64,000 nt of DNA from positions 1 through 64,000 of the IMG/VR virus record IMGVR_UViG_3300004463_000226; one strand, written 5' to 3'. Each line of letters opens with the position of its first letter. The first letter of the stretch is position 1. Below the pieces are notes generated by a model. The model saw only the letters and a program-made list of their open reading frames with translations, made no database searches and was not told the origin of the DNA. Positions 36,561-55,551 of the stretch are shown in pieces. The translations under genes and the position numbers were made by a program.

Positions 36561-36607
36561 ATTAACACCCCTAGTAAATTATTTTTTTACTCAAGCAACA
36601 TTATATT

Positions 36608-36706
36608 GAGGGAGCATGGTCCTTCGTCCACAGGCATCCGACAATGTTTTTTCTACGGTTGATAAGTGTATAGTGTAGGAGCTATACACTTATCTTATAG
36701 TTTTTT
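36608..36706 (+). ncRNA. Candidate ~100-nt small RNA, antisense to the flanking operon
   Basis: AACA-TTATAT-TG at 36597, 5' hairpin GAGGGA/TCCTTC, and a 13-bp terminator (36661-36694) with a T-run. Confidence 0.5.
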
Positions 36707-36762
36707 CAAAAATTACTTTTAACAAAAAAATATGACTCTAGGGATTCCCTAGAGTCATTTTA

Positions 36763-37059
36763 TTACCCAATATCTTCAAATATCAATCGTTTGATTCTTA
36801 ACTTATTAACATCAGCATCTTTAATTGTTTTGAATCGGCTTTTTCCGTTTTCATCAAATAACCCTTGAAGAAACATCTTAGCGTTATCTTTATCTAAGAA
36901 AACAGTGTCGCCAACATGACCTGTCCATAGAATAGTCATTTTCTTAGGATCTGGTTCAGGTTTCATAAGATAAGCGTTATTTGTATCTTCATGAAACTTG
37001 ATATTGAGAAACAATACTTTCTTACCTAAGTCTAACATAATCACAAATTGATCGAACAT
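36763..37059 (-). CDS. Hypothetical protein
   Basis: GGGGG RBS; terminator at 36732-36758. Confidence 0.6.
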   Translation of the reverse strand: MFDQFVIMLDLGKKVLFLNIKFHEDTNNAYLMKPEPDPKKMTILWTGHVGDTVFLDKDNAKMFLQGLFDENGKSRFKTIKDADVNKLRIKRLIFEDIG

Positions 37060-37083
37060 TTCATTTCCCCCAATATTATATTA

Positions 37084-37743
37084 TTAAGCTAAGAGCTTCT
37101 TAAGAAGCTGCTTAGCCATTTTTTCAGTGCCTAAATCTTTGTCAATCTTAACTCCTCTAGCTTTAGCTAGTTGTTTCATACCTTTCTTACCGAGCTTCTT
37201 AAGCTCTTTAAGATATCTTTCTTTATTACTTTCTGTATCTAATCTCACACCCTGACGTTCAGCTTTCTCAAACTTCTTAGCTAAGATCTTTTTAATCTCA
37301 TCTTTATTCTTAACCTTCAAAGCTTTATCAGGGTCTTTCATATACTTCTTATATGAATATGTCTTGAGCTTAAATACCGCTTCAATATATTCGCAAAGCA
37401 TTGATATGTACTCCAGCTCATCTTCTGAATGGGAGCATATTAAAACTATTTTCATATCTTTCTCCACTGCCGCCTTAACAATGATTGCAAGCAATGCTTC
37501 ATTGTCTGGTGTCTGTAGATAGCTTAGATATTGTCTTTTATACTCCTTCATATTATTCTCAAGAAACTGTGCAATGATCTTAGGAGTTGGCATTAAGCTG
37601 CTAATAGCTTTTACATTCTTGAATTTATCTTTTGTTGTAATGTAATCACTAATCAAGACAAACTCATACTTCATAGGATCTTCCACTTCTTGAATAAACT
37701 TATTTAAAAATTTCTTTGAATCCATACTAATAACTACACCCAT
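37084..37743 (-). CDS. Hypothetical protein with basic C-terminal helical (SAP/Rho-N-like) tail
   Basis: Lys-rich LKKLGKKGMKQLAKARGVKI C-terminus; AAGGAG RBS and leader box. Confidence 0.6.
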   Translation of the reverse strand: MGVVISMDSKKFLNKFIQEVEDPMKYEFVLISDYITTKDKFKNVKAISSLMPTPKIIAQFLENNMKEYKRQYLSYLQTPDNEALLAIIVKAAVEKDMKIVLICSHSEDELEYISMLCEYIEAVFKLKTYSYKKYMKDPDKALKVKNKDEIKKILAKKFEKAERQGVRLDTESNKERYLKELKKLGKKGMKQLAKARGVKIDKDLGTEKMAKQLLKKLLA

Positions 37744-37814
37744 TTTGCCGCTCTCCTTTAAATACTTATTATTGATTAGCTAGGTAGAGAGATAACCCTC
37801 TACCTAGAAATATC

Positions 37815-39602
37815 TCATCTCCAGTCTCTATTACCTCGACGTGGATCTTCATCTTCTTCTTCAAGATGCATAAACTCTTCAGATAGCTGCTTAACACGGT
37901 CTTCATCAATGATCTCACCGTCAGTAGGCTCAATATCACCTTCTAACTCTCTACGAAGACGTTCAGCTTCATCTTCATTGTTAACTTTCACTTTAACAGT
38001 ATTTTCAATCTCGATATTATCATCTACCCTGATTGTATTACTGTATACTACTTCAGAATCATGTTCATTATCATCGAAATCTTGACCGTTGTTAGCATCC
38101 ATAATTGCATGCAGAGCTAAATCAGATTCACTAAGACCGTCTGTGAAATCTGAAGGATCAATTGATGCTGTTGCCATTAATGGAGATCTGAATGAAACTT
38201 CCATTGGATCAATAAATGCTTCAACTAACCCGTCACCATCTACGTCGCCAACAGTAACTTCAGTAACTACTTCAGAAGAATCATTTGCTTCCATGATGCT
38301 TACATAAGGATCTTCTTCTGAATGTTCAGAAACAATCTCCTTAACATCTTCTTCTACTTCTTCAATCAGTTCTGCCGCACTAACAATAGTATCGGCTACA
38401 CCTTCAGTACCTAATGCAAGATCAATTAACATAGCACCCATAGGTAGCTCATCATCCTTGGCAGGAATATCACCATCAGTATCACCATATGTTTTAGTGA
38501 TAATACGCATATGGGTTTCCTCAGTTTCAGTCTTCTTGTCAACCTCAATGATGTTAGTTTTCACTAGAGTAGATTCGGCTTCAGTGACTGCTTCCTCCTC
38601 TTTAATTTCCTCAATAGCATCTTTAAAAGATGATAATTCTTGATCATCATCGTCTTCATCAACAGGCTCAACATATTGAGGAGCTGCTTGAAGATCAATA
38701 CCTTTCATAGCTTCAAGCATTGCTAGTGTTTCATCGAATGCTTCATCTTGCGTTTCTTTATCAATAAAAGTTTCTTCTTCATACTTTCTTCTCATAGCTT
38801 TTACCTCCTTAGGATTTACATGTATAGTATTGTAAGGATACTCTAGTTTTTCTTCTTCTGGTTGCTCGGTGTCGTCTTCATCATCCCTAAACTCTTGTTC
38901 GGGTTTAGTGAGTTTATAAGCAAACTCCTTAGCAATCATGTTCTCATGTCTTTCTTGCTCCATCGTAATCTTTCTGCGAACATCCATAGCCGAATATTTC
39001 TTACGACACATAGGGCAATATAAGTTATGGAAGTCCTCATCATAATCTAAGATGGATTGATCTTGGGAACATAGTAACTCATCTCCTTGTACTCTATAGA
39101 TGTATGCAAAATCAAGAATTACTAAATCTCCATTATCACGATAACCCCAGTTGGTAAAGTTCTTCTTAACTGTTCCAACATCTCCAAGAAGATAACTAGT
39201 AGCGAGTTCAGCTAACACTTCCCTCAAATCTTCTTTTCTTTCATCAAACTCTTCCCTAGAGATAACAGTTACGTATTCACAAACTGATAGTAATTCGTTT
39301 GTTTCATATGTTTTAATAACATAAGGTTGTAATTCTTGTGATAATGTGAACTCATTGAGATTGTCCTGTAGACCCCATTTGTCTAGGGCAATCTTAAATA
39401 CATAGTTGTCAATGAGTATAGCTAGGCGGTTAGTACCTGGACCTAGCTCTGTATAATTAATACCATAAGCATTGAGGGTGTCTAGCATAGCAGACACCTT
39501 CATGTTATTGTCAGATATTACTACGTTCTTACATACCTTGTATAAGGCATCTAGAACTTCAGGTCTAAAATATTGATGAATACGACTTCTAATTCTAACC
39601 AT
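37815..39602 (-). CDS. Protein-kinase-like domain + Zn ribbon + long acidic tail
   Basis: ELGPGTNR (Gly loop), VFKIA (Lys), NLNE (alphaC Glu), LGDV...NWG (catalytic D/N), ILDFAY (DFG-like), C..D...CPMC. Confidence 0.7.
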   Translation of the reverse strand: MVRIRSRIHQYFRPEVLDALYKVCKNVVISDNNMKVSAMLDTLNAYGINYTELGPGTNRLAILIDNYVFKIALDKWGLQDNLNEFTLSQELQPYVIKTYETNELLSVCEYVTVISREEFDERKEDLREVLAELATSYLLGDVGTVKKNFTNWGYRDNGDLVILDFAYIYRVQGDELLCSQDQSILDYDEDFHNLYCPMCRKKYSAMDVRRKITMEQERHENMIAKEFAYKLTKPEQEFRDDEDDTEQPEEEKLEYPYNTIHVNPKEVKAMRRKYEEETFIDKETQDEAFDETLAMLEAMKGIDLQAAPQYVEPVDEDDDDQELSSFKDAIEEIKEEEAVTEAESTLVKTNIIEVDKKTETEETHMRIITKTYGDTDGDIPAKDDELPMGAMLIDLALGTEGVADTIVSAAELIEEVEEDVKEIVSEHSEEDPYVSIMEANDSSEVVTEVTVGDVDGDGLVEAFIDPMEVSFRSPLMATASIDPSDFTDGLSESDLALHAIMDANNGQDFDDNEHDSEVVYSNTIRVDDNIEIENTVKVKVNNEDEAERLRRELEGDIEPTDGEIIDEDRVKQLSEEFMHLEEEDEDPRRGNRDWR

Positions 39603-39625
39603 GAGCCACCTCTTATTAAATTATA

Positions 39626-40315
39626 TTATAACCCTACCCTTTGTGCTCTATGCAGTAGATCTAATTTAACTTTAGATCCGATTCTTTTTCTAATATACTC
39701 TTTAACATACATATCTGAAACATGAGTATCTATTCCATAATGCATAACGGATAATACAAATCTACGTGCATATCTAATAATCATATCAATGAACTCAGGA
39801 GTCATGATCTTATAATTGTAGAACTCACATATAGCGTTAGTGTACCTACTAATAAGATCAAATAATTCACGAGTATCTTTGTCTTCTGGGTATTGTTTAG
39901 CAAGCTCTGCAATTTCTTCTTGTTGTTCACGGGTCATCTTTTTGAGACCTTTCAAAGGTGGATTTACTCCTTCAGGAATAAATACATCCTCTACAAAAAT
40001 ATAACGATATTGAAGCTTCTTATATATCATAACATCTATAAGCTTTTTCATCGCTGGAATAGATTTATCTTCCCCTCCTTTATAATTATATACAAGAACC
40101 TGTATTAGTTTAGCACGAATATCCATATAAAGGTGGAAAGACAAAGCATCTTCAAGTACATCGAACTTTATAAGACTGTCCATTTCACGTAAACGATCTT
40201 TTGTATAAGCGTATAGTATTGTAAGATCTTCACGCCAAGGAGCACGGTACGCATCCACACGACTTTGTTTTCGAATTTCCATTTCACACTGTTCTTTTTC
40301 AGTTCTCTTTGTCAT
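39626..40315 (-). CDS. Hypothetical protein
   Basis: GGAGG RBS; operonic. Confidence 0.65.
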   Translation of the reverse strand: MTKRTEKEQCEMEIRKQSRVDAYRAPWREDLTILYAYTKDRLREMDSLIKFDVLEDALSFHLYMDIRAKLIQVLVYNYKGGEDKSIPAMKKLIDVMIYKKLQYRYIFVEDVFIPEGVNPPLKGLKKMTREQQEEIAELAKQYPEDKDTRELFDLISRYTNAICEFYNYKIMTPEFIDMIIRYARRFVLSVMHYGIDTHVSDMYVKEYIRKRIGSKVKLDLLHRAQRVGL

Positions 40316-40346
40316 TTTTGGCTTCCTCCAATAGAAATTATATTTT

Positions 40347-41327
40347 TTAGCCTCGCATTATATTAGCTGCTGTAAAGTTTGACATCTCTTCCTGATATGA
40401 ACCAAAGCTATCATGGTCATTATCCATACCCAGAGATATAAAGAATGCATCCCCAGCAGCATCCATCATCTTAGTTTTATCTTCGTCCTTATCTTTATTC
40501 TTCTTAGTTTGAGCTTTAAGAACTTTAGTCATACGCTTACTTAAACCTTTCTCTTTCATAAGCTTAACAGAGTTCCATCCACGCTCACCAAGATCTTGAT
40601 AAATACGTAAATCTTCAACAGTCTGACGATCCATATAGTTACCACGATAATAGATGATATCATCATCTTCTGTAGTATCTCTGACCATCTCATCGTATTT
40701 ACCATTAGCTATAGCTGTTACACTGATAGAGGCAACTTCCTCCTCTTCTTCCTCACGTTGTATAGAGTTCTTAGTTGCAAAATATTCTTCAAGGAAATCA
40801 ATGTTATCAATCTCCTTAACCTTATTGATACTGACTCGGTTGAAATGTCCTTTCTTGATTAACTTCTTAGCAATCTTATCCTCTTCCATGTCAGTATCAG
40901 CAACGATTTCTTCTTCTCCAGTCAAATCTTCTTCAAGGGCATCAAGAGTATCCTCTAGATTATCATAGTTAATCTTATTGATATTAATACTACTAACCAT
41001 GATTCCCTTCTTAAGAAGCATCTTATTATGCGGTGTATTCTTCATCCTTGGTTTAGCTGGAATGAAATCATCAATCGCATCATTATCAATCTTGATCTTT
41101 AGTAATTGTGGACTACCGTGTTTTACTGCAAGCATTGCCATATACTCATTATATATAGCAAGAGCAGCCATATAGTCTGCAATACTTTTATAACGCCGTC
41201 TTATTCTACGAGCTTCTTTCTCCAGTTCAGACGATGGTTCATCTTCAGTTCGATGATAATTATCTCCGAAGTCTGTAACATAAACTGTCTGTAGAAGTAA
41301 GACCTCTTCTCCCAACGAAATACGCAT
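40347..41327 (-). CDS. Hypothetical protein (early)
   Basis: Early motif at 41364; AGGAGGT RBS before MRISLG. Confidence 0.65.
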   Translation of the reverse strand: MRISLGEEVLLLQTVYVTDFGDNYHRTEDEPSSELEKEARRIRRRYKSIADYMAALAIYNEYMAMLAVKHGSPQLLKIKIDNDAIDDFIPAKPRMKNTPHNKMLLKKGIMVSSININKINYDNLEDTLDALEEDLTGEEEIVADTDMEEDKIAKKLIKKGHFNRVSINKVKEIDNIDFLEEYFATKNSIQREEEEEEVASISVTAIANGKYDEMVRDTTEDDDIIYYRGNYMDRQTVEDLRIYQDLGERGWNSVKLMKEKGLSKRMTKVLKAQTKKNKDKDEDKTKMMDAAGDAFFISLGMDNDHDSFGSYQEEMSNFTAANIMRG

Positions 41328-41435
41328 TGATTTACCTCCTAGCATTTATTCTTCTACCTCTATATAATATATACTTTTAATTCATAATGAAAATTGTTAA
41401 CACAATGAATCTCTCACTGTGTTAACAATCGTAAA

Positions 41436-42716
41436 TTAATTCTTACTTACTCTATCAAGCACCAACTTAGACCAATCATCTAATTGGTGTCTGAAACTAT
41501 CGTACATCATGAAATCTAAGAGCTTGATATTATGCTTATTCTCTTCACCTGAAGATAGTTTGTAGAACAGACCTGTGCAATCAGGTACTTTAAATTCAAA
41601 GACTACTCCAAAATGCTCTAGTCCTACATGGTTCTTTCTATCGTTGATGAGGAACTTAGGTGTAATGTCAAAAGTAAGTTCGCCATCATATTTAACTTCC
41701 TCTCTAAACTCACGTTCAAGATTTCTAGAAAGGAATTCTAGCTGTGACGTAATATAAGCTTCTGGTCCAAAATCAACATGTCCTTGAACCATGGTGTATT
41801 TATTTTGTATGCGGTTTTCAGAGCTACCATTAGTATCAAGTAAGATAACTCTGTTTCCATCAGTAATATATGCTGCAACAACCAACTGCTTATATTCAGG
41901 ATTGTATTCAAGATGCTTTCTCTTCATATATGTAAATCTACTATCCTCAGGGAAAGACATTGTATTTGAGAAATATACCTGGTTACTAAATTCATTTGGA
42001 TATGCTGCAATACCGTCAACATCATTAAGCTCTGTAAGAAGAAGTCTAAATTCATCAGAATGAAACCAACTATTCATTCTTGACTTGAATGCGATAACAT
42101 ATTCATCATACTTTGGATCTGTGAGTTTCTTTGTTATTTCTTCACGAATCACAAAGTGCTCATCTGAATTTATAGGGTAGTTATACAATTCTACCTTCAA
42201 CTCATCCAAAGACATTGAAGCAAAACTAGATATTTTACTTACAGTAATGTCTGGTTCAATGACATTTACAGCAACTGCTTTATTAGATATGTCCTCGGAT
42301 TGAACAGAAGCATCCATTAGAGATGCTGTAAACCCAGATACATCAAATTTCCTTTGTTTATCAAGAAGCATTTCATTTATCTTGGATACTGATTCCAATA
42401 CTTTCGGATCAGGATTAGTTAGTGCTTCATGTACAGTTTCAGGATTCAAACCTAAACCCTTGATTATTGTATCAAACATGCCTTCAACGCCATTAAGTAA
42501 ACCATTTTTATTAACATCATTAGATGTTCTTAGTTCTAATATACGTTCATTGAATAGTGCCAGTGGCTGCACTATTTCAGGATCAGATAAAATCCTCTCG
42601 AACAATTCTTGATCATAAGAGTTTAATTTTCTCAACATAGAGCCTAGCATTGATCTCATTGTTGTTTCAACCAATTTCATTTCTGCTCCAGTTTCCATTA
42701 GATTTTCATTTTCCAT
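41436..42716 (-). CDS. Nudix-fold hydrolase with N-terminal extension
   Basis: YKQLVV..YI, QGHVD...LEREFREEV Nudix box, HFGVVF, DWS; paralog of 60718-61515. Confidence 0.75.
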   Translation of the reverse strand: MENENLMETGAEMKLVETTMRSMLGSMLRKLNSYDQELFERILSDPEIVQPLALFNERILELRTSNDVNKNGLLNGVEGMFDTIIKGLGLNPETVHEALTNPDPKVLESVSKINEMLLDKQRKFDVSGFTASLMDASVQSEDISNKAVAVNVIEPDITVSKISSFASMSLDELKVELYNYPINSDEHFVIREEITKKLTDPKYDEYVIAFKSRMNSWFHSDEFRLLLTELNDVDGIAAYPNEFSNQVYFSNTMSFPEDSRFTYMKRKHLEYNPEYKQLVVAAYITDGNRVILLDTNGSSENRIQNKYTMVQGHVDFGPEAYITSQLEFLSRNLEREFREEVKYDGELTFDITPKFLINDRKNHVGLEHFGVVFEFKVPDCTGLFYKLSSGEENKHNIKLLDFMMYDSFRHQLDDWSKLVLDRVSKN

Positions 42717-43430
42717 TTAAATTTCCTCCTTTAATCTATCTAACATACTGTTCTGGGGCTTTTTACTTTTCACATAGACGCCATATCCCTCTTGAATTGC
42801 TTTATCACATAAAGCATTCTGTAGATAAATAAATAGAAACTGGTCTTTAGTGAGTTTAACCTTATTAAACTTCTCGAACTTCTTCTTCAAATCATCTACA
42901 TTCTTTTTAGCTATGTGTGAGTTAATGTGGAAGAAACTAACTGTATGACCAGCGTTACGTATCTTAGTGAGAAATTTAAAAGCCCTTTTAAATTCTTCCT
43001 GATGCATAACTGGTTGCTTAGTGCTTGATATAAACACACCTTTTTTAGCAGTACGTATCCAGTTATATATCCATTTAGTTAATGACATATAGCAAAGCAT
43101 TGAATCTGTGTAAAGCTTTATATTAACATTCTTAAGAACCCCGCCTTCAACGTATAACCAAGTATGCTCTAATGCATTTGCAATTGCATTGATTTCAGCA
43201 AACTGATTACTACCTCTGCGATATGTAAGATTCTTGTGGACAAGTTCTTTCTTATCATTGAAAAACCTAAATGAACTTATAGACAGATATTTCCGTCTAA
43301 CTTCATCTTCTGGATCTTTCTCCTCATCTTTTTTCTCATCCTCATTTTCTTTCTTAGGAAGCTCATCATCAAATGAGCCTCCGTCAGTAAATAGTAATAT
43401 TTCTTTAGTTAAATGCATATATTCACCCAT
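42717..43430 (-). CDS. rnhA: Ribonuclease HI
   Basis: LFTDGGS, NQFAEI.A, LYTDS, W...W, HINSH and N..CD give the DEDD catalytic set. Confidence 0.9.
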   Translation of the reverse strand: MGEYMHLTKEILLFTDGGSFDDELPKKENEDEKKDEEKDPEDEVRRKYLSISSFRFFNDKKELVHKNLTYRRGSNQFAEINAIANALEHTWLYVEGGVLKNVNIKLYTDSMLCYMSLTKWIYNWIRTAKKGVFISSTKQPVMHQEEFKRAFKFLTKIRNAGHTVSFFHINSHIAKKNVDDLKKKFEKFNKVKLTKDQFLFIYLQNALCDKAIQEGYGVYVKSKKPQNSMLDRLKEEI

Positions 43431-43434
43431 ATTA

Positions 43435-43758: not shown

Positions 43759-43926
43759 TTAATTCCTCTCCCTTTTTTGACAATTTAGTGTATAAAAAAC
43801 TTAAACTATAAATTAATAATCACACCCGTTGTGTGTTTATGTGGCTTTTGTCATTTAGTTGCCCTCCGTATTCGCAAGATAAAAACATATACTCTAGTTT
43901 ATTCTAGAGTATATGTTTTTAACGTT

Positions 43927-45204: not shown

Positions 45205-45219
45205 GAATATTTCACTTCC

Positions 45220-47315: not shown

Positions 47316-48041
47316 TTACGCAATGTTTTCAAAAGCTTTAAAGTTAGTCCGTAGAAAATCCACTATCGTTTCATGGATTGTATCTATAGGTAACATTTCA
47401 CCATTAGGTGTACATTCAATACGATGCCAGCCGCAGTACTTAATAACACGGTCTCTGACACCATATACATCTTTTAGATGGTCAATATTTTCATGAATAT
47501 CTTCCATCGGTTTACCTTCATATCGCTTCATAATATTAGATACAGATATTTCAGGTTTTACATCCAAGTAGAACACTGCATCTGGATGAGGTAATCCTAA
47601 GTCAATATACTCAAGTTCCTCAATCCATTGAATATAACCTTCAATGTTATTCTTGTTAGTGAGGTTACCTGCTTGGTGAAGAATATTTGAAGTAGTATAT
47701 CTGTCACAGATTACATGTGTTCCTTCTTTGAGATGTTCAATGAGGGATTTACCGCTATACACCTGCTCAATAAATGATGAAACACGGTCAACAGCATAAA
47801 ACGATGATATCTGTTTAATATATTGGATATTGTCTTCCTGATGATACATGTTCTTAAACTGTCCGTCCAAGTATTTCCTAACAAGAACTGAAGATTCATT
47901 AGCATAGTTAGGAAATGATACAATAATAACAGGGATATTAGAAGCCTCTAGTCTTCTATATAACTTTATCGCCTGTGTATTTTTACCACTACCATCTAGC
48001 CCTTCAATGCCAATAACTCTTCCTGAATATCCTAGTGTCAT
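47316..48041 (-). CDS. tmk: Thymidylate (dTMP) kinase
   Basis: IEGLDGSGK.TQ P-loop, FP.Y, YAVDR, CDRY..SN, P.PD.VFYLD. Confidence 0.92.
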   Translation of the reverse strand: MTLGYSGRVIGIEGLDGSGKNTQAIKLYRRLEASNIPVIIVSFPNYANESSVLVRKYLDGQFKNMYHQEDNIQYIKQISSFYAVDRVSSFIEQVYSGKSLIEHLKEGTHVICDRYTTSNILHQAGNLTNKNNIEGYIQWIEELEYIDLGLPHPDAVFYLDVKPEISVSNIMKRYEGKPMEDIHENIDHLKDVYGVRDRVIKYCGWHRIECTPNGEMLPIDTIHETIVDFLRTNFKAFENIA

Positions 48042-48456: not shown

Positions 48457-48509
48457 CATTCCTCCAAACAAATTATTATTGATTACACGTTTATAATATA
48501 TAAATGGCA

Positions 48510-48914: not shown

Positions 48915-48964
48915 GGTTTCCCCTCCTTTTAATAAAAAAATAAGCATCCGAAGATGCTCATTAG

Positions 48965-49423
48965 TTATCCATGTGAACGTTCATAATCACCAGTATATGT
49001 AAGTGGCTGACTCCATCTCCATTGGTTTATTGTTGAATACTGTCCATCGTTAATATCTACTATAATGAATGGAATATATTGATCATTGACTGTACAAGCG
49101 AGCACCAGATACATAGTCTGATCGTCTATTTTATATGGTCTAGTTTCCCTAAGAATGACAGTCTTTGTTTTTCTATCATATCCTTGACTTTCAATATACC
49201 TTAAAGGGAATGTAGGAATAAAGCCTTTATCTAATAGTGTTTTAAATAGATCTACTATTGTATCATATTTTGTATTAACTAACTCAATCTCATCGTCCAT
49301 CGTCAATATCTGCTGCGACTCAACTCCTTCAATAGTTGCTGGTGTTATAGGACAAAAGAAATATGAAAGTCGGTCTCCTTTCTCATACATTTCTAACATA
49401 GTTTTAAAGTTTTGAATAGGCAT
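48965..49423 (-). CDS. Hypothetical protein (early)
   Basis: Early motif at 49463; AGGAGG RBS. Confidence 0.65.
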   Translation of the reverse strand: MPIQNFKTMLEMYEKGDRLSYFFCPITPATIEGVESQQILTMDDEIELVNTKYDTIVDLFKTLLDKGFIPTFPLRYIESQGYDRKTKTVILRETRPYKIDDQTMYLVLACTVNDQYIPFIIVDINDGQYSTINQWRWSQPLTYTGDYERSHG

Positions 49424-49503
49424 ATTAAAGCCCTCCTTAGAATTATATTGTATTACCTATTTATAATATATACTTAAAAAGAATGACTATCCGAAGATAG
49501 TCA

Positions 49504-49761
49504 TTATATAGTTAGCTGATGTAGTGATTCCTTCTTAACCAGTTCATGCATTAACTCGACGATAAAATTCTTCGATGGACTGAATCCTAGAATGGTTTTG
49601 GCAGCTTCTTCATTATCTGGTTTCCATTGAAGATCGTCCATTTTAATATAGTGTAAATTAAAAGTTCGATGATAAAGATGCCATTTATCATCAATTGCAA
49701 CTTCGGAGATACATTTGTCTTCACAATCATTTACATATACTCTACGCCATTTAATATCCAT
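49504..49761 (-). CDS. Hypothetical protein
   Basis: GAGGTG RBS. Confidence 0.6.
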   Translation of the reverse strand: MDIKWRRVYVNDCEDKCISEVAIDDKWHLYHRTFNLHYIKMDDLQWKPDNEEAAKTILGFSPSKNFIVELMHELVKKESLHQLTI

Positions 49762-49770
49762 GTTTTCACC

Positions 49771-50139
49771 TCATGAAAATATCTTTTTCCAGAATGGTTT
49801 ATCATCTTCTTGTTTCCATTGATCAAGAATAGCCTGAGCCGATTCTTCAGTATGTGAATTCTGACTAAGTTTTTCTCCTAGTTTTTTATCAGTGTAACAG
49901 TTGAACTGATCGGTGTCAACATCATATGCTATTCTATAGATGTATAGGGTTTCACCAGCTAATACAATACTTTTCTTTTCCTTTAATTCAATTGATAGTT
50001 CTCTAGTTTCAAAAGGAATCCATTTACTCCATACACTTCGATTTATTTCATATACAAGACCACTTGCTCCATATGGAGCATTATATCTATCTGGTTTTAA
50101 TGTTATTACGTCCTCTTTACCAAAGAATACATATTTCAT
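49771..50139 (-). CDS. Hypothetical protein with a C-terminal amphipathic helix (KPFWKKIFS)
   Basis: AGGAG RBS. Confidence 0.6.
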   Translation of the reverse strand: MKYVFFGKEDVITLKPDRYNAPYGASGLVYEINRSVWSKWIPFETRELSIELKEKKSIVLAGETLYIYRIAYDVDTDQFNCYTDKKLGEKLSQNSHTEESAQAILDQWKQEDDKPFWKKIFS

Positions 50140-50145
50140 AAGTAT

Positions 50146-50664
50146 CTACTCCTTTAAGTTAATAAATAAGTACATTTTTTCTTTTACATCATGTAACTTA
50201 TCTCTGAACACATTAACAACATTTTTACTCTTGCTAATATATCCGATGAATTGCTTAAGGTTAATTACCTTTTTCAGTCTCTTTTTAGACCTAGCCGAGT
50301 GGAGTATCTCGTATGCTTCTAATAAGGTCTTTTTCTCTTTTTTCTTTAAATTATAGTCCTTAATATAGTGCTCTAGCTCAAGTAGTGTTGAGCTAATTCT
50401 TCCTCTTTCTTCTCCAATAATGTCTCTAACCATTTGTAATTCAACTCTTGTTAAAACCATATCTAGTTCATCATCATGCTCTAGATATAAGTCATCAAAA
50501 TCTACTAATAAACCATTAATGTGTTTCTCTTTCTTAATCTTGGAGCAGAAATACTCTTCTGTATCAAATTCCTTCTGTAACATATAGTTCTGAACATCTT
50601 TAGATGATTCACTAATAGCTACAACTTTCTGTGAACTGGTTTGTATAATGACAAATAGTTTCAT
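50146..50664 (-). CDS. Hypothetical protein, paralog family A
   Basis: GGAGG RBS before MKLFVII; same architecture as 44755 and 45492. Confidence 0.6.
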   Translation of the reverse strand: MKLFVIIQTSSQKVVAISESSKDVQNYMLQKEFDTEEYFCSKIKKEKHINGLLVDFDDLYLEHDDELDMVLTRVELQMVRDIIGEERGRISSTLLELEHYIKDYNLKKKEKKTLLEAYEILHSARSKKRLKKVINLKQFIGYISKSKNVVNVFRDKLHDVKEKMYLFINLKE

Positions 50665-50706
50665 ATTCCCATCCTCCAAAAAAATGAAGCTGAGTTTCAG
50701 CTTCAT

Positions 50707-51042
50707 TTATCTATGTGCTAATTTATCAGGATAAAGTTCTACAATCTCATTGTTGGGACGTAGAAACGCTTTTTTAATGTAATAGAACGTATATACTTCA
50801 TCATCTTTAAAGTCAGTCTTATATGTTGTATGTGCTGTAAACTCAATAGTTGTTCCATCTTTCTTACGGAACGTCACAACCATAAACTGATCATTGTTAG
50901 GCATGTCAGTATAGTATTGAAATGCCATATCCTCAGCAAGATGTTTCTTGTGTGGAATATTCATTGCTATCAGTACAGTAACTGAAATTAATGTAATTGT
51001 AGCTAGTATTCCGAATATAACCTTGTAAAATAAATTATTCAT
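50707..51042 (-). CDS. Membrane-anchored hypothetical protein
   Basis: N-terminal TM helix. Confidence 0.6.
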   Translation of the reverse strand: MNNLFYKVIFGILATITLISVTVLIAMNIPHKKHLAEDMAFQYYTDMPNNDQFMVVTFRKKDGTTIEFTAHTTYKTDFKDDEVYTFYYIKKAFLRPNNEIVELYPDKLAHR

Positions 51043-51074
51043 ATTGATTAACTCTCTCCCTTTTATGTCTTCAA

Positions 51075-51512
51075 TTATATGTTTGCGAGTGTTTTAAATT
51101 CTATATTGTAAGTAAGGGTATCTTTAAGATCTAAATTTAATCTAGTAATTCCTTCTTTTATATAAATTATAGGACATGCTTCTATTCCTTTATCATGTCG
51201 ATATACCCATACAAATAAAACATGGTCAAATCTCATTCGTCTTGTTGCTTTAGTTTTAGCATCTATTATCAGATACTCATCATCTAGTGCATAGTCTATA
51301 GTTTTATATTGACTATTGTTAATAATGAAGTGGTTCTCTGATAAATATTTTAAAAGATCTGTTATAGGTAAACCTTTATCAAGATCCCTAAATATTGAGT
51401 TAACTGATAATTGTCTTTTATGTATATCTGTAATATACATCACAGTTAATCCTATTTCCTTAGGATGTGGAAATTCCTCCCTGAATTTGAGTAAATTGTT
51501 TAACATTATCAT
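51075..51512 (-). CDS. Hypothetical protein (early)
   Basis: Early motif at 51570; GAGGT RBS. Confidence 0.6.
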   Translation of the reverse strand: MIMLNNLLKFREEFPHPKEIGLTVMYITDIHKRQLSVNSIFRDLDKGLPITDLLKYLSENHFIINNSQYKTIDYALDDEYLIIDAKTKATRRMRFDHVLFVWVYRHDKGIEACPIIYIKEGITRLNLDLKDTLTYNIEFKTLANI

Positions 51513-51589
51513 TTTTTACCTCTCCCTAATAAATATATTGGATACATAGCAGAACTATGTATCCAATATATAATATATAACTAAAATAA

Positions 51590-51732
51590 AAGAATAATCG
51601 GTCTAAGGGATTTGGACCAAATCAATGAGGGAAAACGGCGCGACTCATCGCAATCAATGTGTTCCACTAGTAAGAACACGAAAAGGTTTTATTCCCTGAT
51701 CGGTCCAGGAAATCCCAATAGTGTTATCTATT
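51590..51732 (-). ncRNA. Candidate ~140-nt structured RNA (long rod capped by a three-way junction)
   Basis: Nested stems GGGAUUU/AAAUCCC, GGACC/GGUCC, AUCA/UGAU, GGGAA/UUCCC and AAC/GUU enclose hairpins GUGUUC/GAACAC and GCGA/UCGC. AACT-N6-TA motif at 51732-51743; U-rich 3' end; no ORF. Confidence 0.65.
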
Positions 51733-51748
51733 AATTAATAGTTCAAAA

Positions 51749-52057
51749 TTATTTTCGTCTAAATGGTAATTTAAACTTCGGTCGAGTAGTCTTTGTAATG
51801 TACGGAATTAGCACATATACGATAACAATTATGCAAGGTAATATGATAAACCCAGCATTTATAATTAACTGAGCCACACCATATCCAAACTGGACTATAC
51901 CAAGTTCAGGTTCAATGAACACAAATGCAATTCCAATAATAACATTAAATATACCTTGTACAACTGTAACTCCAGCATATAATATAGTGGCACAGAATAA
52001 TGCAATTGACACATAACAAAGTAACTTCATCAATAATTTATCTCTAAATTTCTCCAT
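51749..52057 (-). CDS. Hypothetical membrane protein
   Basis: Two to three long hydrophobic segments. Confidence 0.65.
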   Translation of the reverse strand: MEKFRDKLLMKLLCYVSIALFCATILYAGVTVVQGIFNVIIGIAFVFIEPELGIVQFGYGVAQLIINAGFIILPCIIVIVYVLIPYITKTTRPKFKLPFRRK

Positions 52058-52063
52058 AATACA

Positions 52064-52552
52064 CTACTCCTTACCTTTACTTGGGAATAAATCAGGTCTT
52101 GCTCTTCTAGCAACTCTAGCCATAAGCATTTTTTGAATATCGTTAATAGCATTTGTAAATTCTTGTTGATCTAGTGGATGGGTCGGGTTCAGAGACATAT
52201 ATAAGTTATACATGTCAGAACTTAATTTAACAAGCTCTCCTTCAACTTCACGGGCATATATATCCTCCAATAGATCACATTTAGCAGCTTCATAATAATA
52301 TCCGTCCCTAGCATGAGATCCACACTTATCACATATGAAGATAGGGTCTCTCATTGAAATATTTCTTTCTTTATATACATAATGCTGTACTTCACCTCTT
52401 TCTTCAGACAACGTCATTCTTCTTTTACCTAAACAATTCTCATTGGAGCAAAACATTAGATAGTTACCTTCACTATCAAAACGATCGCCTCTTCCAATAG
52501 AATCAAATAAGTGAAGACCAAACAAATGACTCATATTATCGTCTATATTCAT
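52064..52552 (-). CDS. Zn-ribbon-containing hypothetical protein
   Basis: CSNENC...CDKCG plus a helical C-terminal HP.D..EF...I..IQ...AR domain. Confidence 0.6.
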   Translation of the reverse strand: MNIDDNMSHLFGLHLFDSIGRGDRFDSEGNYLMFCSNENCLGKRRMTLSEERGEVQHYVYKERNISMRDPIFICDKCGSHARDGYYYEAAKCDLLEDIYAREVEGELVKLSSDMYNLYMSLNPTHPLDQQEFTNAINDIQKMLMARVARRARPDLFPSKGKE

Positions 52553-52559
52553 AACAACA

Positions 52560-53102
52560 TCACTCCTTTAATAGTTTTATACATTGGTCTAACGATGCTC
52601 TTATTTCCTTCCTTATATTCTCTTGCTGTCTCGTACAAGCTCTTTTAATGGCTTTATAATCAATAACAGTTCTTTCATATAGACCAAAGAAATACTTGTA
52701 TTGTTTTATTACATCTTTTGATTGAAATCGTATTCTTATTATATTGGTTTTATCATTAGAGAAATCTATTATTTTGAAATCCACATAAAATATGTTCTCC
52801 CAGTCAGCATGAATACTGTCCCACTTAACTATACACGGATTTCTGTGTCTAATATTACCTGTAGCATAATTCTTATCTACCATTATAGCTAGTGAAGGTT
52901 CAAAATAATTTGTATCACCTTCAGTTATATCAACTGCTTGACTTGTATAAAATCTCCTGTTACTTTTTATTTCCAGAAATATCATTAGATTCACAAATGA
53001 AAATAAATCACTTACAATTGTATCCCTCATATTAAAACTATTGAATAGGTATCTTGTTTTTTCTATGTCCATAGGTTTTTTTAAAAAAGATGGTAGCTTC
53101 AC
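52560..53102 (-). CDS. Hypothetical protein
   Basis: GGAGG RBS, GTG start. Confidence 0.6.
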   Translation of the reverse strand: MKLPSFLKKPMDIEKTRYLFNSFNMRDTIVSDLFSFVNLMIFLEIKSNRRFYTSQAVDITEGDTNYFEPSLAIMVDKNYATGNIRHRNPCIVKWDSIHADWENIFYVDFKIIDFSNDKTNIIRIRFQSKDVIKQYKYFFGLYERTVIDYKAIKRACTRQQENIRKEIRASLDQCIKLLKE

Positions 53103-53209
53103 TTATTTCCCTCCAATGCAATGTATTCTTATAATAAAGTTAAGAGGATTATAAATACTTACTAAAAGACTTTAAATATAGACATAGGATTATTTTCCTA
53201 TGTCCGCCA

Positions 53210-53335
53210 GATAATATTATCTATTTTTCATTAAATAAATATATAATAACATTAATAAGTAAATAATACTATTAAATGTTATTATATATACTAATATTAT
53301 CTATTTATATAATCTCTATATATCTCATAAAAAAT
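53210..53335. other. Extremely AT-rich tract with a 15-bp inverted repeat (candidate DNA-unwinding element)
   Basis: ATATATAATAACATT (53239-53253) / AATGTTATTATATAT (53275-53289); ATTATCTATTT direct repeats at about 53216 and 53296. Confidence 0.5.
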
Positions 53336-53515
53336 CTCCAACATATATCTTTATATCCTTGCCCCCCCTATCCCCCCCATAACACCGTAAAAGGGTGCTA
53401 TGAGGAGAACAAGGTGTGTGTCTGGGATAAATAAAGATACGACGAATGAAAGTCCATCTTTTCATCAATGCGATATTTTTGTTGGGAGACAAATATATCT
53501 AAGTTTGACTAGATT
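53320..53515 (-). ncRNA. Candidate ~200-nt structured RNA with a 21-bp G-U-rich helix and a G7-AUA-G7 tract
   Basis: AACA-TTAAAG-TA at 53515-53526 (-). CCUUGUUCUCCUCAUAGCACC pairs fully with GGUGUUAUGGGGGGGAUAGGG only on the - strand (6 G-U pairs). Outer stems UAUCUUUAU/AUAAAGAUA and UCUCC(C)AACA/UGUUGGAGA. Confidence 0.7.
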
Positions 53516-53565
53516 ACTTTAATGTTCCCCATTAGTAAAAAATAATTGAACATTTTTTTGCTTAC

Positions 53566-53780
53566 AAAAACCCCTAATAGATCCAGCGAGGTCTATTAGG
53601 GAATTTTTGCATATGGGAAATGTGATAGAGCATGAGTACCAGTTTTTTATCTCCCAAGCAGTTAGATAAGAATTTGGTTCATGGTCATGGTTCTGAAACG
53701 TCCGCGTTTCAACAGTCTGTTTGATTTTAATATATGCCTTCTATACAGGGGCCTGGTAATACTTGGAAATATATCCAATT
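53566..53780 (-). ncRNA. Candidate ~215-nt multi-branched RNA with its own promoter and terminator
   Basis: AACA-TAATAG-TA at 53780-53791. Closing stem UACCAG/CUGGUA around three hairpins (including UGAAACG-CGGA-CGUUUCA and UUAUCU/AGAUAA). Terminator CCCUAAUAGA/UCUAUUAGGG plus a U-run; no ORF with an RBS. Confidence 0.65.
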
Positions 53781-53926
53781 ACTATTATGTTACTATAGTA
53801 ATTAAATAAAATTAAAAAAATAGACCTTGCCAATAAGCAAGGTCGAAATAATATAAAACATAGGAAGAAATAAATTTAAAATGGAGTTAAATCTATTACT
53901 TATCTTGTTTAATAATTAGTAACTTA

Positions 53927-54211
53927 TTATTTAGATTTCTTTATACAACCGTAATTATTACTAAACCCATTACCGTGCCAAGTTTCACTTACAACTCCCC
54001 ATTTACCACCCATTAATTTACACTTCTCTTTCTTTAATTCAATAATTTTGTTTTCATGTATAGCTAAAGGAATAAATGGTGCAAAGAAAGTAAATATTAA
54101 TACAATCATACCTATTGCACGAATATGTATATTTCTACCCATTAGAGCAATATACACTCCAATACCTGCGCTAATAAGTCCAAATATAAACCAAATTAAA
54201 AATGTTTTCAT
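53927..54211 (-). CDS. Small membrane protein
   Basis: Two TM helices and a C..MGG...Y.C tail. Confidence 0.6.
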   Translation of the reverse strand: MKTFLIWFIFGLISAGIGVYIALMGRNIHIRAIGMIVLIFTFFAPFIPLAIHENKIIELKKEKCKLMGGKWGVVSETWHGNGFSNNYGCIKKSK

Positions 54212-54256
54212 ATTATCATATCCTTTCTTAATACAAAAAATAAAAACCTTGTCGAA

Positions 54257-54703
54257 TTAACGACAAGGCGAAAAGATTTTGCGCTGAATCATTTTCATGA
54301 ATGCCAATATATCATCTTCTTTTACTTCAGTTTTAACTGTAATTTGTTTTCTGCTATTCATGAACTCTTCTCTACGTTTCATACGATCATTATGGCGTTT
54401 CTTGATGAAGTCAGGTGCATGTCTTTCCACCTTGGGATCTGTTATCGTTTGAATATTTAATACTCTTGGTTTTCTTCTAGTAAAAGCAGGCATTGTGTCT
54501 ATTTCTTTCATATTATATATCGGCTCTTCAATAACCTTTGTGATCACAATAGGTTCTTCAACTACTTCTACAGTTGTTACACCCATTACAAAATCAGCTT
54601 CAGCTTTAAGAGCCTCAGATTCACCTTGGAAGAATTTCTTTATGCTATCAGTATCAATCTTTGTTGTTGAAACTACTACATTTTTATTTTCGATAATTTT
54701 CAT
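54257..54703 (-). CDS. Hypothetical protein
   Basis: GGGAG RBS with a leader box at 54726. Confidence 0.6.
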   Translation of the reverse strand: MKIIENKNVVVSTTKIDTDSIKKFFQGESEALKAEADFVMGVTTVEVVEEPIVITKVIEEPIYNMKEIDTMPAFTRRKPRVLNIQTITDPKVERHAPDFIKKRHNDRMKRREEFMNSRKQITVKTEVKEDDILAFMKMIQRKIFSPCR

Positions 54704-54745
54704 TATCTATCACTCCCAATTTTTATTATTATTGATTAGTTGAAT

Positions 54746-55255
54746 CTATTTTATTTTCTTAGAGATTCTTGTCTTTTCCTTAGACACTGCCTCATTGAAA
54801 ATATTTACTAATTCTGGGAAGGATTGAAATGCAGCAACTATTGCTTGACCGTAAAGGAAATAGCAAAAGAAAGATATAGTCTCTCTACATAATTTATTAA
54901 AGAAGTCTTTAAATTCTCCTGTAAGTAAAGAATATGCCAATGCAAATATATTAGCCTCAACTTCAACACGTTGATATCTATACTTACGCATACCCCAATA
55001 ACTATCTTCATGATTGACATACTTGACATTTTTATATAGCCACATATTGCTTCTTTTATTTTGCCAAGCATGAAACATTTCATGAGAAAGTGTAGTTGAT
55101 CTACTATCCTTATAAACAAGAACCTGATCTATCATAGGAACATAGTAACCATTAGAAGATTCAGGTTTTCTAGTCTCAGGATCAAGGTACATGACACTCG
55201 TCTTAGACAATCTTAAAATCCTTCTTAAAATCTTTTCATGTGTTGTTAATTTCAT
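54746..55255 (-). CDS. Zincin-like metallopeptidase (HExxH)
   Basis: LSHEMFHAWQ...EVEAN; early motif at 55303. Confidence 0.65.
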   Translation of the reverse strand: MKLTTHEKILRRILRLSKTSVMYLDPETRKPESSNGYYVPMIDQVLVYKDSRSTTLSHEMFHAWQNKRSNMWLYKNVKYVNHEDSYWGMRKYRYQRVEVEANIFALAYSLLTGEFKDFFNKLCRETISFFCYFLYGQAIVAAFQSFPELVNIFNEAVSKEKTRISKKIK

Positions 55256-55365
55256 AATGCTTTACCCCCAAATTATTATTGATTATTATATTACTTACAA
55301 ATATAATATATACTTGACATTTTTCAAAAAACTAATTTTTTAAAATTTATCTTAAACATAAAATT

Positions 55366-55551
55366 AATGGGGTTATCCCCCAGGAGGCTTTAGATGACGT
55401 TCGGCAAAGACCACGCTCTACTGTATCAAAACCTTATTTTTACCCAATAGATTTAGTGGTACGGCTTCTAGATTGAGGGACCTTTTATATAAATGATTCT
55501 ATTCATCAGTATTCTTTATTCAGAAGAATGTTGATGAATAGAATTGTTTTT
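55366..55551 (+). ncRNA. Candidate fold-back RNA containing an 18-codon ORF with a sequestered RBS
   Basis: AACA-TAAAAT-TA at 55355. Nested pairs GGU..UCCC/GGGACC, GGAGGC/GCUUCU, ACCAC/GUGGU and UCUA/UAGA. AGGAGG precedes an ORF at 55394-55450. Long terminator hairpin at 55494-55548. Confidence 0.55.

What the first reader, a model, noticed from the sequence alone, without database searches (positions are those of the whole stretch)
36597..55551. A set of five stand-alone, late-promoter-driven structured RNA genes
Seen: the motif AAC(A/T)-N6-T(A/G), which precedes structural and virion RNAP genes, also sits at the 5' edge of five GC-enriched, strongly base-paired intergenic islands: 36608+, 51732-, 53515-, 53780- and 55366+. 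Three end in clear terminator hairpins and one in a U-rich run. None looks like tRNA, tmRNA, SRP, 6S or a hammerhead by eye. The motif alone should occur by chance roughly once per kb per strand in DNA this AT-rich, so the evidence is its coincidence with fold boundaries and terminators. Inference: a phage-encoded ncRNA repertoire expressed by the phage's own RNAP. Possible roles are the early-to-late switch, decoys or antitoxin mimics against host defence, or virion-packaged RNAs.
Basis: partly seen in the sequence, partly recalled or inferred. Interest (0 to 1): 0.8.

Follow-up and report, generated by a model that had tools for sequence, protein, structure and literature searches.

The report
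Small noncoding RNA units in jumbo phage
An uncultivated soil relative of the giant Bacillus phage AR9 carries several short, protein-free units, each starting at a phage-type promoter; comparison with related phages shows one is a new, conserved folded RNA and one is a conserved G-rich element that may mark a replication origin, while the rest are weaker.

Summary
The window is the first 64 kb of an AR9/PBS1-like jumbo phage contig from rhizosphere. All five motif sites exist and the islands are GC-enriched. The loose motif is not enriched overall, and only two island bodies fold better than shuffles once terminator hairpins are removed.

Thirteen related genomes split the set:
- Site 55366+ is a real, new RNA family. 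It is found in 12 genomes, always starts at AACA-N6-TA, and has five helices (93% of cells paired; 22 of 31 pairs compensatory). It has no Rfam match and no conserved reading frame. It sits upstream of the RNA polymerase beta-like gene.
- Site 53515- is conserved in 11 of 13 genomes as a late promoter followed by G5-7/N2-5/G5-7, usually the 3' strand of a G·U-rich hairpin. A purine-rich stretch and the most AT-rich DNA of the locus follow, at the GC-skew minimum. This looks like an R-loop-primed origin.
- Site 51732- is a three-way-junction RNA shared only with the closest relative, with a few compensatory changes.
- Sites 53780- and 36608+ are promoter-to-terminator units with no detectable fold or conservation.

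No transcript data could be found.

The parts
36597..36608 (+). Site 1 promoter motif AACATTATATTG. It fits the AR9 consensus AACA-N6-TG, with the start at G36608.
   Evidence: It fails the window-trained matrix only because it ends in G. AR9 accepts A or G at that position (PMC5312081).
36608..36706 (+). Site 1 unit, about 95 nt. It has a weak hairpin plus U6 (36610-36652) and then a plus-strand terminator (36661-36694) with a T run. It lies between minus-strand genes, antisense to the upstream region of gene 36132-36560.
   Evidence: Body z = -0.5. No comparators could be found.
51732..51743 (-). Site 2 promoter motif AACTATTAATTA.
   Evidence: It is conserved, with its upstream flank, in L013.
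51607..51716 (-). Site 2 core: a three-way junction of a long closing stem and two hairpins.
   Evidence: (z -2.5 to -3.2). Across 27 pairs in two sequences there are 2 compensatory changes, 3 one-sided changes and no broken pair.
51533..51571 (-). AT-rich 16-17 bp hairpin that closes site 2. Its arms differ from those in L013 but stay complementary. An early-type promoter (51563-51579, minus strand) overlaps its upstream arm.
53780..53791 (-). Site 4 promoter motif AACATAATAGTA.
   Evidence: 11.5 bits. The promoter and the first ~30 nt align with L013.
53565..53780 (-). Site 4 unit. The 176-nt body shows no significant fold. It ends at the bidirectional terminator 53572-53601.
   Evidence: body z -0.9. 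No homologue and no coding remnant.
53515..53526 (-). Site 3 promoter motif AACATTAAAGTA.
   Evidence: 11.9 bits. An AACA-N6-TA motif lies 11-137 nt 5' of the G motif in 11/11 genomes.
53329..53515 (-). Site 3 transcript: a rod-like fold closed by a stem and followed by U6.
   Evidence: z -5.2; antisense -2.1.
53357..53414 (-). Long G·U-rich hairpin. Its 3' strand carries the conserved motif G7-ATA-G7 (53362-53378).
53205..53330 (.). The most AT-rich DNA of the whole 64 kb (8% GC at 53211-53310). A 15-nt direct repeat (53212 and 53292) flanks a palindrome with 23-nt arms (53239-53289).
55355..55366 (+). Site 5 promoter motif AACATAAAATTA, with the start at A55366.
   Evidence: An AACA-N6-TA motif is present at the same place in 12/12 family members.
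55366..55486 (+). Site 5 conserved RNA motif. In order: P1 hairpin with a variable loop; CAGGAGG (55381-55387); P2 (two helix segments) containing the NUG at 55394-55396; P3 enclosing the P4 hairpin with loop UACGG; UUGAGGGA (55473-55480); U run.
55497..55543 (+). Strong 20-bp terminator after site 5. A separate terminator of this kind is present in only some relatives.
55572..55624 (+). Inverted repeat (arms 55572-55583 and 55614-55624). It encloses the proximal late promoter (55584-55595) and covers the ribosome-binding site of the RNAP beta-like gene, up to the base before its TTG start (55625).

Best explanation
The five sites are short transcription units without conserved reading frames. 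Each begins at an AR9-type non-virion-RNAP promoter (AACA/T-N6-T-A/G) and most end at a hairpin. They are heterogeneous.

Shown by comparison with relatives:
- Site 5 (55366-55486+) is a new, conserved ~120-nt RNA with five covarying helices and a nearly invariant CAGGAGG junction. It is made just upstream of the RNAP beta-like gene. In this phage it is ended by a strong terminator, so the main product is a discrete ~180-nt RNA.
- Site 3 (53515-53329, minus strand) is a conserved module of late promoter plus G-tract pair. The G tracts usually form the 3' strand of a long G·U-rich hairpin.
- Site 2 is a three-way-junction RNA that travels as an independent module between different flanking genes in the two closest genomes.

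Inferred:
- Site 5 acts as a protein- or ribosome-binding regulatory RNA linked to expression of the RNAP beta-like subunit. An inverted repeat that hides that gene's ribosome-binding site only in read-through transcripts insulates the gene from site 5's promoter.
- Site 3's transcript forms a stable RNA-DNA hybrid at the G-rich and purine-rich stretch next to the AT-richest DNA, and primes or opens a replication origin.
- Sites 1 and 4 are short, unstructured base-pairing or antisense RNAs, or have no function of their own.
For: Phage identity. The RNAP beta-like gene matches PBS1, Goe21 and Staphylococcus and Listeria jumbo phages at 35-39%. The window's early motif (11 matches against 0.29 expected) and late motif match those mapped by dRNA-seq in AR9.

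Site 5. nhmmer finds it in 8 relatives. A covariance model built from 9 sequences finds 3 more that were not used to build it (E 1e-16 to 2e-10). 93.4% of cells pair, against 38-48% when partners are slid. 22 of 31 pairs carry compensatory changes, and 0 of 500 shuffles reach the observed values. The promoter is conserved in 12/12. Indels of 1-3 nt after the NUG break the reading frame.

Site 3. The G motif lies on the same strand, 0.4-2.3 kb from the RNAP gene, in 11/13 genomes, and a late motif lies 5' of it in 11/11. It is mostly paired in the minimum-energy fold in 9/11. The upstream complement beats 95% of random segments in 6/11, with one more borderline at 0.11.

Site 2. The promoter, core and closing hairpin are conserved in L013 between different neighbouring genes.

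A ~94% identical soil relative is 5-8% diverged in coding DNA. It differs by about 1% over roughly 53435-53651 and by 1.6% over 55364-55877.
Against: No transcript evidence: no RNA run was listed. The phage is uncultivated, and 'late' rests on analogy with AR9.

The bodies of sites 1, 4 and 5 fold no better than shuffles as single sequences. Sites 1 and 4 have no homologues.

Site 2 rests on two sequences only, and a covariance model and pattern scans found no others.

The G motif lacks a convincing pairing partner in 4 of 11 genomes, so the hairpin is not the universal feature.

The alignment used for the pair counts was fitted to the model, which favours the structure.
Confidence: 0.6

Rival explanations
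1. Sites 5 and 2 are cis-acting 5' leaders (riboswitch-like or operator-like) of the genes downstream of them, not stand-alone RNA genes. Site 5 would control the RNAP beta-like gene by regulated termination or read-through.
For: Site 5 is always upstream of, and in the same direction as, the RNAP beta-like gene. Only about half of the relatives have a separate terminator after it; in the others only P3/P4 plus a U run lies before the gene. A covarying hairpin hides the gene's ribosome-binding site in read-through transcripts only. AR9 has 5' UTRs of up to 491 nt.
Against: A conserved proximal late promoter lies between site 5 and the gene in 11/12 genomes. In L022 a 220-aa gene, and in L021 550 nt, separate the two. 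I found no consistent alternative pairing between the motif and the hairpin. Site 2 has different downstream genes in the window and in L013.
Confidence: 0.25
2. Site 3 is not an RNA gene. It is the transcribed part of a replication origin. The late promoter drives a transcript whose G tracts and purine-rich tail form a persistent RNA-DNA hybrid, possibly a hybrid G-quadruplex with the non-template strand, next to an AT-rich unwinding element. The hybrid primes leftward leading-strand synthesis.
For: In 11 of 13 genomes the promoter lies 5' of the G5-7/N2-5/G5-7 motif, which is always on the non-template strand. The next 60 nt are 55-78% purine, and the lowest-GC 100-nt window of the whole locus lies 100-260 nt downstream in 7/11. 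In the window that tract holds direct repeats around a palindrome. The cumulative GC-skew minimum (55445) and the point where gene orientation diverges lie about 2 kb from site 3, within the same noncoding cluster. T4 oriF and oriG are a promoter plus an AT-rich unwinding element, use R-loop primers, and sit at transcription divergence and skew shifts (PMC3016281).
Against: The skew is confounded with gene orientation. Intergenic DNA is AT-rich in general. In most genomes the G tracts are predicted to be paired within the RNA, which would compete with hybrid formation. There is no replication data, and the promoter class is 'late'.
Confidence: 0.3
3. Sites 1 and 4 are chance promoter-like motifs next to terminators that belong to neighbouring genes. 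They make no functional RNA.
For: The loose motif occurs about as often as expected by chance. The bodies are not structured. They are not conserved in relatives beyond the promoter and ~30 nt for site 4. The terminator at 53572-53601 is bidirectional.
Against: The plus-strand terminator at 36661-36694 has no plus-strand gene to serve. The site 4 promoter scores 11.5 bits, among the best in the window. Relatives carry other short promoter-to-terminator units in the same slot. The 3' part of site 4 is nearly invariant in the ~94% identical relative.
Confidence: 0.35
4. The islands encode very small proteins. For example, site 5 would encode the 18-codon frame 55394-55450, which has an AGGAGG 6 nt upstream.
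For: A perfect ribosome-binding sequence is followed by ATG, GTG or TTG at the same column in all 12 members.
Against: Indels of 1-3 nt shift the frame, and predicted peptide length varies from 9 to more than 35 residues with only the first two residues shared. The start codon and the following bases are in helix P2 and covary as base pairs. tblastx gives no protein-level signal for sites 1, 3 and 4.
Confidence: 0.05

Closest known systems
AR9 late (non-virion RNAP) transcription units and late antisense RNAs (Lavysh et al. 2017, PMC5312081)
   Same: The promoter consensus AACA-N6-T(A/G), with the last base as the start, is the same, and so is the early consensus TATATATTAT-N6-G. AR9 also has late promoters that drive antisense transcripts and long 5' UTRs.
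   Different: The AR9 study assigned start sites to annotated genes and does not use the term noncoding. PBS1 has a different gene order around its RNAP beta gene, and the site 5 model gives no significant match there.
5'UTR-derived sRNAs of giant Pseudomonas phages (201phi2-1 sRNA005 and its phiKZ counterpart; PMC11512511)
   Same: A start site is followed closely by a terminator upstream of a conserved late gene. The location and fold are conserved among related giant phages. The function is unknown.
   Different: That is a different phage lineage with a different promoter type and a different gene (a tail protein). Sequence relatedness was not tested. Those sRNAs were seen as transcripts, whereas the ones here were not.
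Phage T4 oriF/oriG R-loop origins (PMC3016281)
   Same: A phage promoter is followed by an AT-rich unwinding element, located where transcription diverges and nucleotide skew shifts.
   Different: The T4 origins have no conserved G-tract pair. Function here is untested, and the promoter class here is 'late'.
Mitochondrial conserved sequence block II and ColE1 RNA II primers (from my own knowledge, not checked with the tools here)
   Same: A G-run interrupted by one to a few bases lies on the non-template strand about 100 nt downstream of a promoter. In those systems it stabilises an RNA-DNA hybrid or hybrid G-quadruplex that yields a replication primer.
   Different: There is no sequence relationship, the polymerase is of a different type, and here the G tracts usually have an RNA pairing partner.
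ncRNAs annotated in jumbo phage PA5oct (PMC7318152)
   Same: A jumbo phage genome annotated with a few noncoding RNAs from RNA-seq.
   Different: According to the abstract that phage relies on the host polymerase. I made no comparison of sequence or structure.

Membership tests
AR9-type non-virion RNAP ('late') promoter | AACA (or near variant), an exact 6-nt spacer, then T followed by the A/G start base | tested here: met
   All five sites match. Site 2 has AACT and site 1 ends in TG. The consensus is taken from PMC5312081.
AR9-type non-virion RNAP ('late') promoter | Concentrated in front of genes and in intergenic DNA | tested here: met
AACA-N6-TA occurs at 1.76 per kb-strand in intergenic DNA and 0.36 in coding DNA.
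AR9-type non-virion RNAP ('late') promoter | Motif kept at the same position in related genomes | tested here: met
   Site 5 12/12, site 3 11/11, site 2 2/2, site 4 in L013. Site 1 has no comparator.
AR9-type non-virion RNAP ('late') promoter | Transcription starts at the last base, late in infection, on uracil-containing DNA | not testable with these tools
   No RNA run was listed and the phage is uncultivated.
Intrinsic terminator | G+C-containing hairpin followed by a U run on the transcribed strand | tested here: met
   Sites 1, 4 and 5 meet it. The site 2 hairpin is AT-rich, with a U-rich tail, and covaries with L013. Site 3 has a closing stem plus U6 in the window only.
Any Rfam 15 family, tRNA or tmRNA | Score at or near the family threshold | tested here: not met
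   The only matches are miRNA-like hits on the terminator hairpins.
Conserved structured RNA (covariation-supported) | Helices kept through compensatory changes across genomes, above the controls | tested here: met
   Site 5. Site 2: only two sequences, so inconclusive. Site 3: variable hairpin, partly supported. Sites 1 and 4: no homologues.
Riboswitch or cis-regulatory leader | Conserved domain directly joined to the regulated reading frame, with alternative pairing to an expression platform | tested here: not met
   A conserved proximal promoter lies between site 5 and the gene in 11/12 genomes, other DNA is inserted in L021 and L022, and I found no consistent alternative pairing.
Small protein gene | Reading frame and length conserved among homologues | tested here: not met
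   Frame-shifting indels; peptide lengths of 9 to more than 35 residues.
R-loop-primed phage origin (T4 oriF/oriG type) | Promoter followed by an AT-rich unwinding element | tested here: met
R-loop-primed phage origin (T4 oriF/oriG type) | Located at transcription divergence and a shift in nucleotide skew | tested here: inconclusive
   The skew minimum at 55445 and the strand switch at 55.3-55.6 kb lie about 2 kb from site 3. Skew is confounded with gene orientation.
R-loop-primed phage origin (T4 oriF/oriG type) | Persistent RNA-DNA hybrid and origin activity | not testable with these tools
   This needs hybrid mapping, marker-frequency analysis or a plasmid replication assay.

The most novel reading that the evidence does not exclude
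The conserved module of late promoter, G5-7/N2-5/G5-7 motif, purine-rich stretch and extreme AT tract (53.2-53.5 kb) is the replication origin of this clade of AR9-like jumbo phages. It would fire through a transcript made by the phage's own multisubunit RNAP, which forms an R-loop or hybrid G-quadruplex in the manner of mitochondrial CSB II. The family at 55366+ would be a dedicated regulatory RNA of the virion RNAP gene sitting beside that origin.
Probability: 0.2. Interest if true: 0.8.

Novelty: new member of a known kind. Interest (0 to 1): 0.6.

Why it matters
AR9-like and phiKZ-like jumbo phages run their own multisubunit RNA polymerases, but almost nothing is known about their noncoding RNAs or where they start replication. 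This work gives:
- one well-supported new RNA family with a defined promoter, fold and genomic partner (the RNAP beta-like gene);
- one conserved G-tract module that makes a concrete, testable proposal for an origin;
- evidence that a whole noncoding cluster sits at the point where transcription diverges.

It also shows that promoter motif plus folding energy in one genome misjudges such sites. The best-supported RNA had no single-sequence folding signal, and two sites that looked well folded owed it to their terminators.

Tried and rejected
- blastn, near and distant modes, against 50,697 phage records: no homologues of the islands.
- The search for related loci with the RNAP gene in IMG/VR and JGI metagenomes: only 41-44% identical relatives, without synteny or the elements. 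Closer relatives came only from the protein database plus contig look-ups.
- RNA sequencing runs: none was listed. The single read-laying run gave DNA contigs only, and its variant table was cut short, so base-by-base covariation with the 94% identical relative could not be read.
- Paralogy among the five sites: none.
- Covariance model of site 2: no further members. Pattern scans for site 2: only the window's own contig.
- Pattern scan for site 5 in bacterial and archaeal genomes: 5 matches, all by chance since none matches the model.
I used per-sequence folds and duplex statistics instead.
- Comparators for site 1: only the window's own contig.
- Mimicry or alternative pairing between site 5 and the hairpin at the RNAP gene's ribosome-binding site: examined by eye across genomes; not consistent, so dropped.
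- PBS1 locus: different gene order and no equivalent elements.
- First genome-wide z-score scan timed out. It was repeated with 15 shuffles per window, so single values are noisy.
Full report
**What the window is.** The window is the first 64 kb of IMG/VR contig 3300004463_000226, which is 234 kb long and comes from rhizosphere. Its 1382-aa ORF at 55625-59773 is an RNA polymerase beta-like protein. It matches Bacillus phages PBS1 and Goe21 and Staphylococcus, Listeria and Yersinia jumbo phages at 31-39% identity. Two promoter-like motifs recur in front of genes. One is TATATATTAT-N6-G, with 11 matches against 0.29 expected. The other is AACA-N6-TA. They match the early (virion RNAP) and late (non-virion RNAP) consensus sequences mapped by dRNA-seq in AR9, where the last A/G of AACA-N6-T(A/G) is the start site (PMC5312081). 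'Late', however, is an analogy. Genes with the motif here include a virion protein but also thymidylate kinase-like, thymidylate synthase-like and DHH phosphoesterase genes.

**Checking the observation.** The motif ends exactly at the five stated coordinates, and all five lie in gene-free gaps.
- The loose motif occurs 247 times against 263 expected, so it carries no information by itself.
- The strict form AACA-N6-TA is about five times denser in intergenic than in coding DNA.
- A matrix trained on 15 gene-proximal sites scores sites 3, 4, 5 and 2 at 11.9, 11.5, 10.0 and 9.5 bits. Site 1 fails only because it ends in G, which AR9 accepts.
- The islands are GC-enriched: 0.37-0.52, against 0.29 for intergenic DNA.
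- Terminator-like hairpins close sites 1, 4 and 5.
- Rfam and ARAGORN find nothing, even with lax filters on each island alone.

**Folding energy.** With terminators included, all five fold better than shuffles, with z from -2.8 to -5.8. With terminators removed, the bodies of sites 1, 4 and 5 give z of -0.5, -0.9 and +0.1. Only site 2 (-3.2) and site 3 (-5.2, strand-specific) remain. Across the genome, 120-nt windows average z -0.73 with a 5th percentile of -4.1, so only site 3 is in the tail.

**Finding relatives.** DNA searches and the IMG/VR and JGI scans gave only distant relatives (41-44% identity) with different gene order. A protein search with the RNAP gene found relatives at 55-78% identity. 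I fetched twelve of their contigs as loci L013-L024. All keep the same layout: minus-strand genes, then large gene-free gaps, then the plus-strand RNAP gene. The small genes between 51 and 55 kb are poorly conserved.

**Site 5 (55366+).**
- nhmmer finds it in 8 relatives. A covariance model built from 9 sequences finds all of these plus three that were not used to build it: L022, L024 and L019, with E from 1e-16 to 2e-10.
- The RNA starts AAUGR directly after a conserved AACA-N6-TA in 12/12 genomes.
- Its fold is, in order: P1 with a variable loop; a nearly invariant CAGGAGG whose ends belong to P1 and P2; a long P2 (two helix segments) that contains an NUG; P3 enclosing the P4 hairpin with loop UACGG; UUGAGGGA; and a U run.
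- 93.4% of cells pair, against 38-48% when partners are slid. 22 of 31 pairs carry compensatory changes. No shuffle out of 500 reaches the observed values.
- The AGGAGG-N6-NUG looks like a translation start. However, indels of 1-3 nt shift the frame, predicted peptides range from 9 to more than 35 residues, and the start codon covaries as a base pair. It is an RNA, not a peptide gene.
- It is absent from the 41-44% identical relatives, from PBS1 and from GTDB representative genomes.
- A separate strong terminator follows it in the window, L015, L021 and L022. In the others only P3/P4 plus U's lies before the next element.

**The RNAP gene's own control region.** The RNAP beta-like gene has its own top-scoring late promoter, 55584-55595. 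In 9 of 13 genomes this promoter is enclosed by a covarying inverted repeat whose downstream arm covers the ribosome-binding site, ending at the base before the start codon. The upstream arm is transcribed only from upstream promoters, so read-through transcripts from site 5 would be translationally silent. I read this as insulation. It argues that site 5 is a separate product rather than a simple leader, although a cis role is not excluded.

**Site 3 (53515-).** Sequence searches found no homologue. A simple pattern did: G5-7, then 2-5 bases, then G5-7. It lies on the same strand, 0.4-2.3 kb from the RNAP gene, in 11 of 13 genomes and essentially nowhere else in those loci (absent from L019 and L022).
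- An AACA-N6-TA lies 11-137 nt upstream of it in each of the 11 genomes, usually after a terminator.
- In 9 of 11 the G tracts are mostly paired in the minimum-energy fold with an upstream C/U-rich tract, around an apical hairpin of variable sequence. In at least L015 and L020 the central triplet changes together with its partner.
- The upstream complement beats 95% of random segments in 6 of 11, with one more borderline at 0.11. The hairpin is therefore common but not universal. The G tracts themselves are the conserved feature.
- The next 60 nt downstream are 55-78% purine. In 7 of 11 loci the single lowest-GC 100-nt window of the whole locus lies 100-260 nt further on. In the window this is 53211-53310 at 8% GC, the lowest in 64 kb. 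It contains a 15-nt direct repeat around a palindrome with 23-nt arms.
- The cumulative GC skew of the window peaks at 13874 and bottoms at 55445. These are the points where gene orientation converges and diverges.

This combination is the architecture of T4 oriF and oriG: a promoter plus an AT-rich unwinding element, an R-loop primer, and a location at transcription divergence (PMC3016281). From my own knowledge, the interrupted G run on the non-template strand also recalls mitochondrial CSB II and ColE1 RNA II. I rate the origin reading at about 0.3. It is attractive but rests on layout alone.

**Site 2 (51732-).** The promoter, a 110-nt three-way junction and an AT-rich closing hairpin are conserved in L013, the closest relative. 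There the flanking genes are different, which argues for an independent module. Of the 27 predicted pairs, 2 change on both sides, 3 change on one side and none breaks. The closing hairpin keeps its pairing with different arm sequences. An early-type promoter for the downstream gene overlaps the upstream arm of this hairpin, so early transcripts would lack the full hairpin. No further members were found.

**Sites 4 and 1.** Site 4 has a good promoter and a bidirectional terminator, but its body is unstructured and has no homologue. Only the promoter and ~30 nt align with L013. Relatives carry other short promoter-to-terminator units in the same slot. Site 1 is a plus-strand motif and a plus-strand terminator inside a block of minus-strand genes, antisense to the upstream region of gene 36132-36560. 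It has no fold beyond the terminator and no comparators. AR9 is known to make late antisense RNAs. These two sites remain plausible but unproven.

**Independent conservation hint.** A soil run from a different study (X12) holds a ~94% identical relative. Its coding pieces differ by 5-8%. A piece covering roughly 53435-53651 differs by one substitution and one insertion, and the piece at 55364-55877 differs by 1.6%. The variant table was cut short, so positions could not be analysed further.

**Comparison with what is known, and verdict.** Noncoding RNAs are already reported in jumbo phages. PA5oct has four (PMC7318152). 201phi2-1 has eleven sRNAs, one of which is conserved by location upstream of a tail gene across giant phages (PMC11512511). 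The kind is therefore known. What is new here is a specific family with strong covariation, and a conserved G-tract module, in an unstudied clade of AR9-like phages. There are two or three real conserved noncoding elements rather than five equivalent structured RNA genes, and none of the proposed roles has been tested.

Noticed in passing
window 55572-55624 (+): An inverted repeat (TTTTCGTTCACC / GGTGAACGAAA) encloses the proximal late promoter of the RNAP beta-like gene and covers its ribosome-binding site. It covaries in 9 of 13 related genomes. An inner stem pairs part of the promoter with the 5' UTR and leaves the AAC of the motif unpaired. It can form only in read-through RNA or in single-stranded DNA.
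   Followed up: partly
window, 9 sites (e.g. 34899-34910-, 48473-48484-, 55273-55284-, 63350-63361+): AATCAATAATAA occurs 9 times against 0.18 expected. Most copies lie shortly downstream of an early-type promoter, so it is probably a shared 5' UTR element of early transcripts.
   Followed up: partly
window 53815-53905 (-): A further short unit sits just after the stop of gene 53927-54211: a pyrimidine-rich stretch (TCCATTT..ATTTCTTCCT) and then the terminator GACCTTGC...GCAAGGTC. It aligns with units in L013 and L015, where a proper late motif precedes it. Here the AACA-to-TA spacing is 7. nhmmer support is weak (E 0.27).
   Followed up: partly
A plus-strand AACTATAAATTA (9.3 bits) and, about 65 nt later, an 18-bp hairpin lie between minus-strand genes. 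It is among the most stable 120-nt windows of the scan.
   Followed up: partly
window 841-960 (+), inside the 2014-aa ORF 74-6118: This window gave the lowest folding z-score of the whole scan (-10, -40 kcal/mol for 120 nt). That scan used only 15 shuffles per window.
   Followed up: no
window 28295-28306 (-): A weaker G-tract pair (GGGGATAAGGGG) lies in the 200-nt leader of gene 27656-28270, downstream of an early-type promoter.
   Followed up: no
window 47316-48041 (-) and 62105-63073 (+): Thymidylate kinase-like and thymidylate synthase-like genes carry late-type motifs. This may bear on whether this phage, like AR9 and PBS1, uses uracil or another base in its DNA.
   Followed up: no
window 55625-59773 (+) compared with L027 (PBS1): The RNAP beta-like gene here is one uninterrupted 1382-aa frame. 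Its first ~400 residues have no match in known phages. In PBS1 the homologue is split into two annotated parts with an HNH endonuclease gene between them.
   Followed up: no
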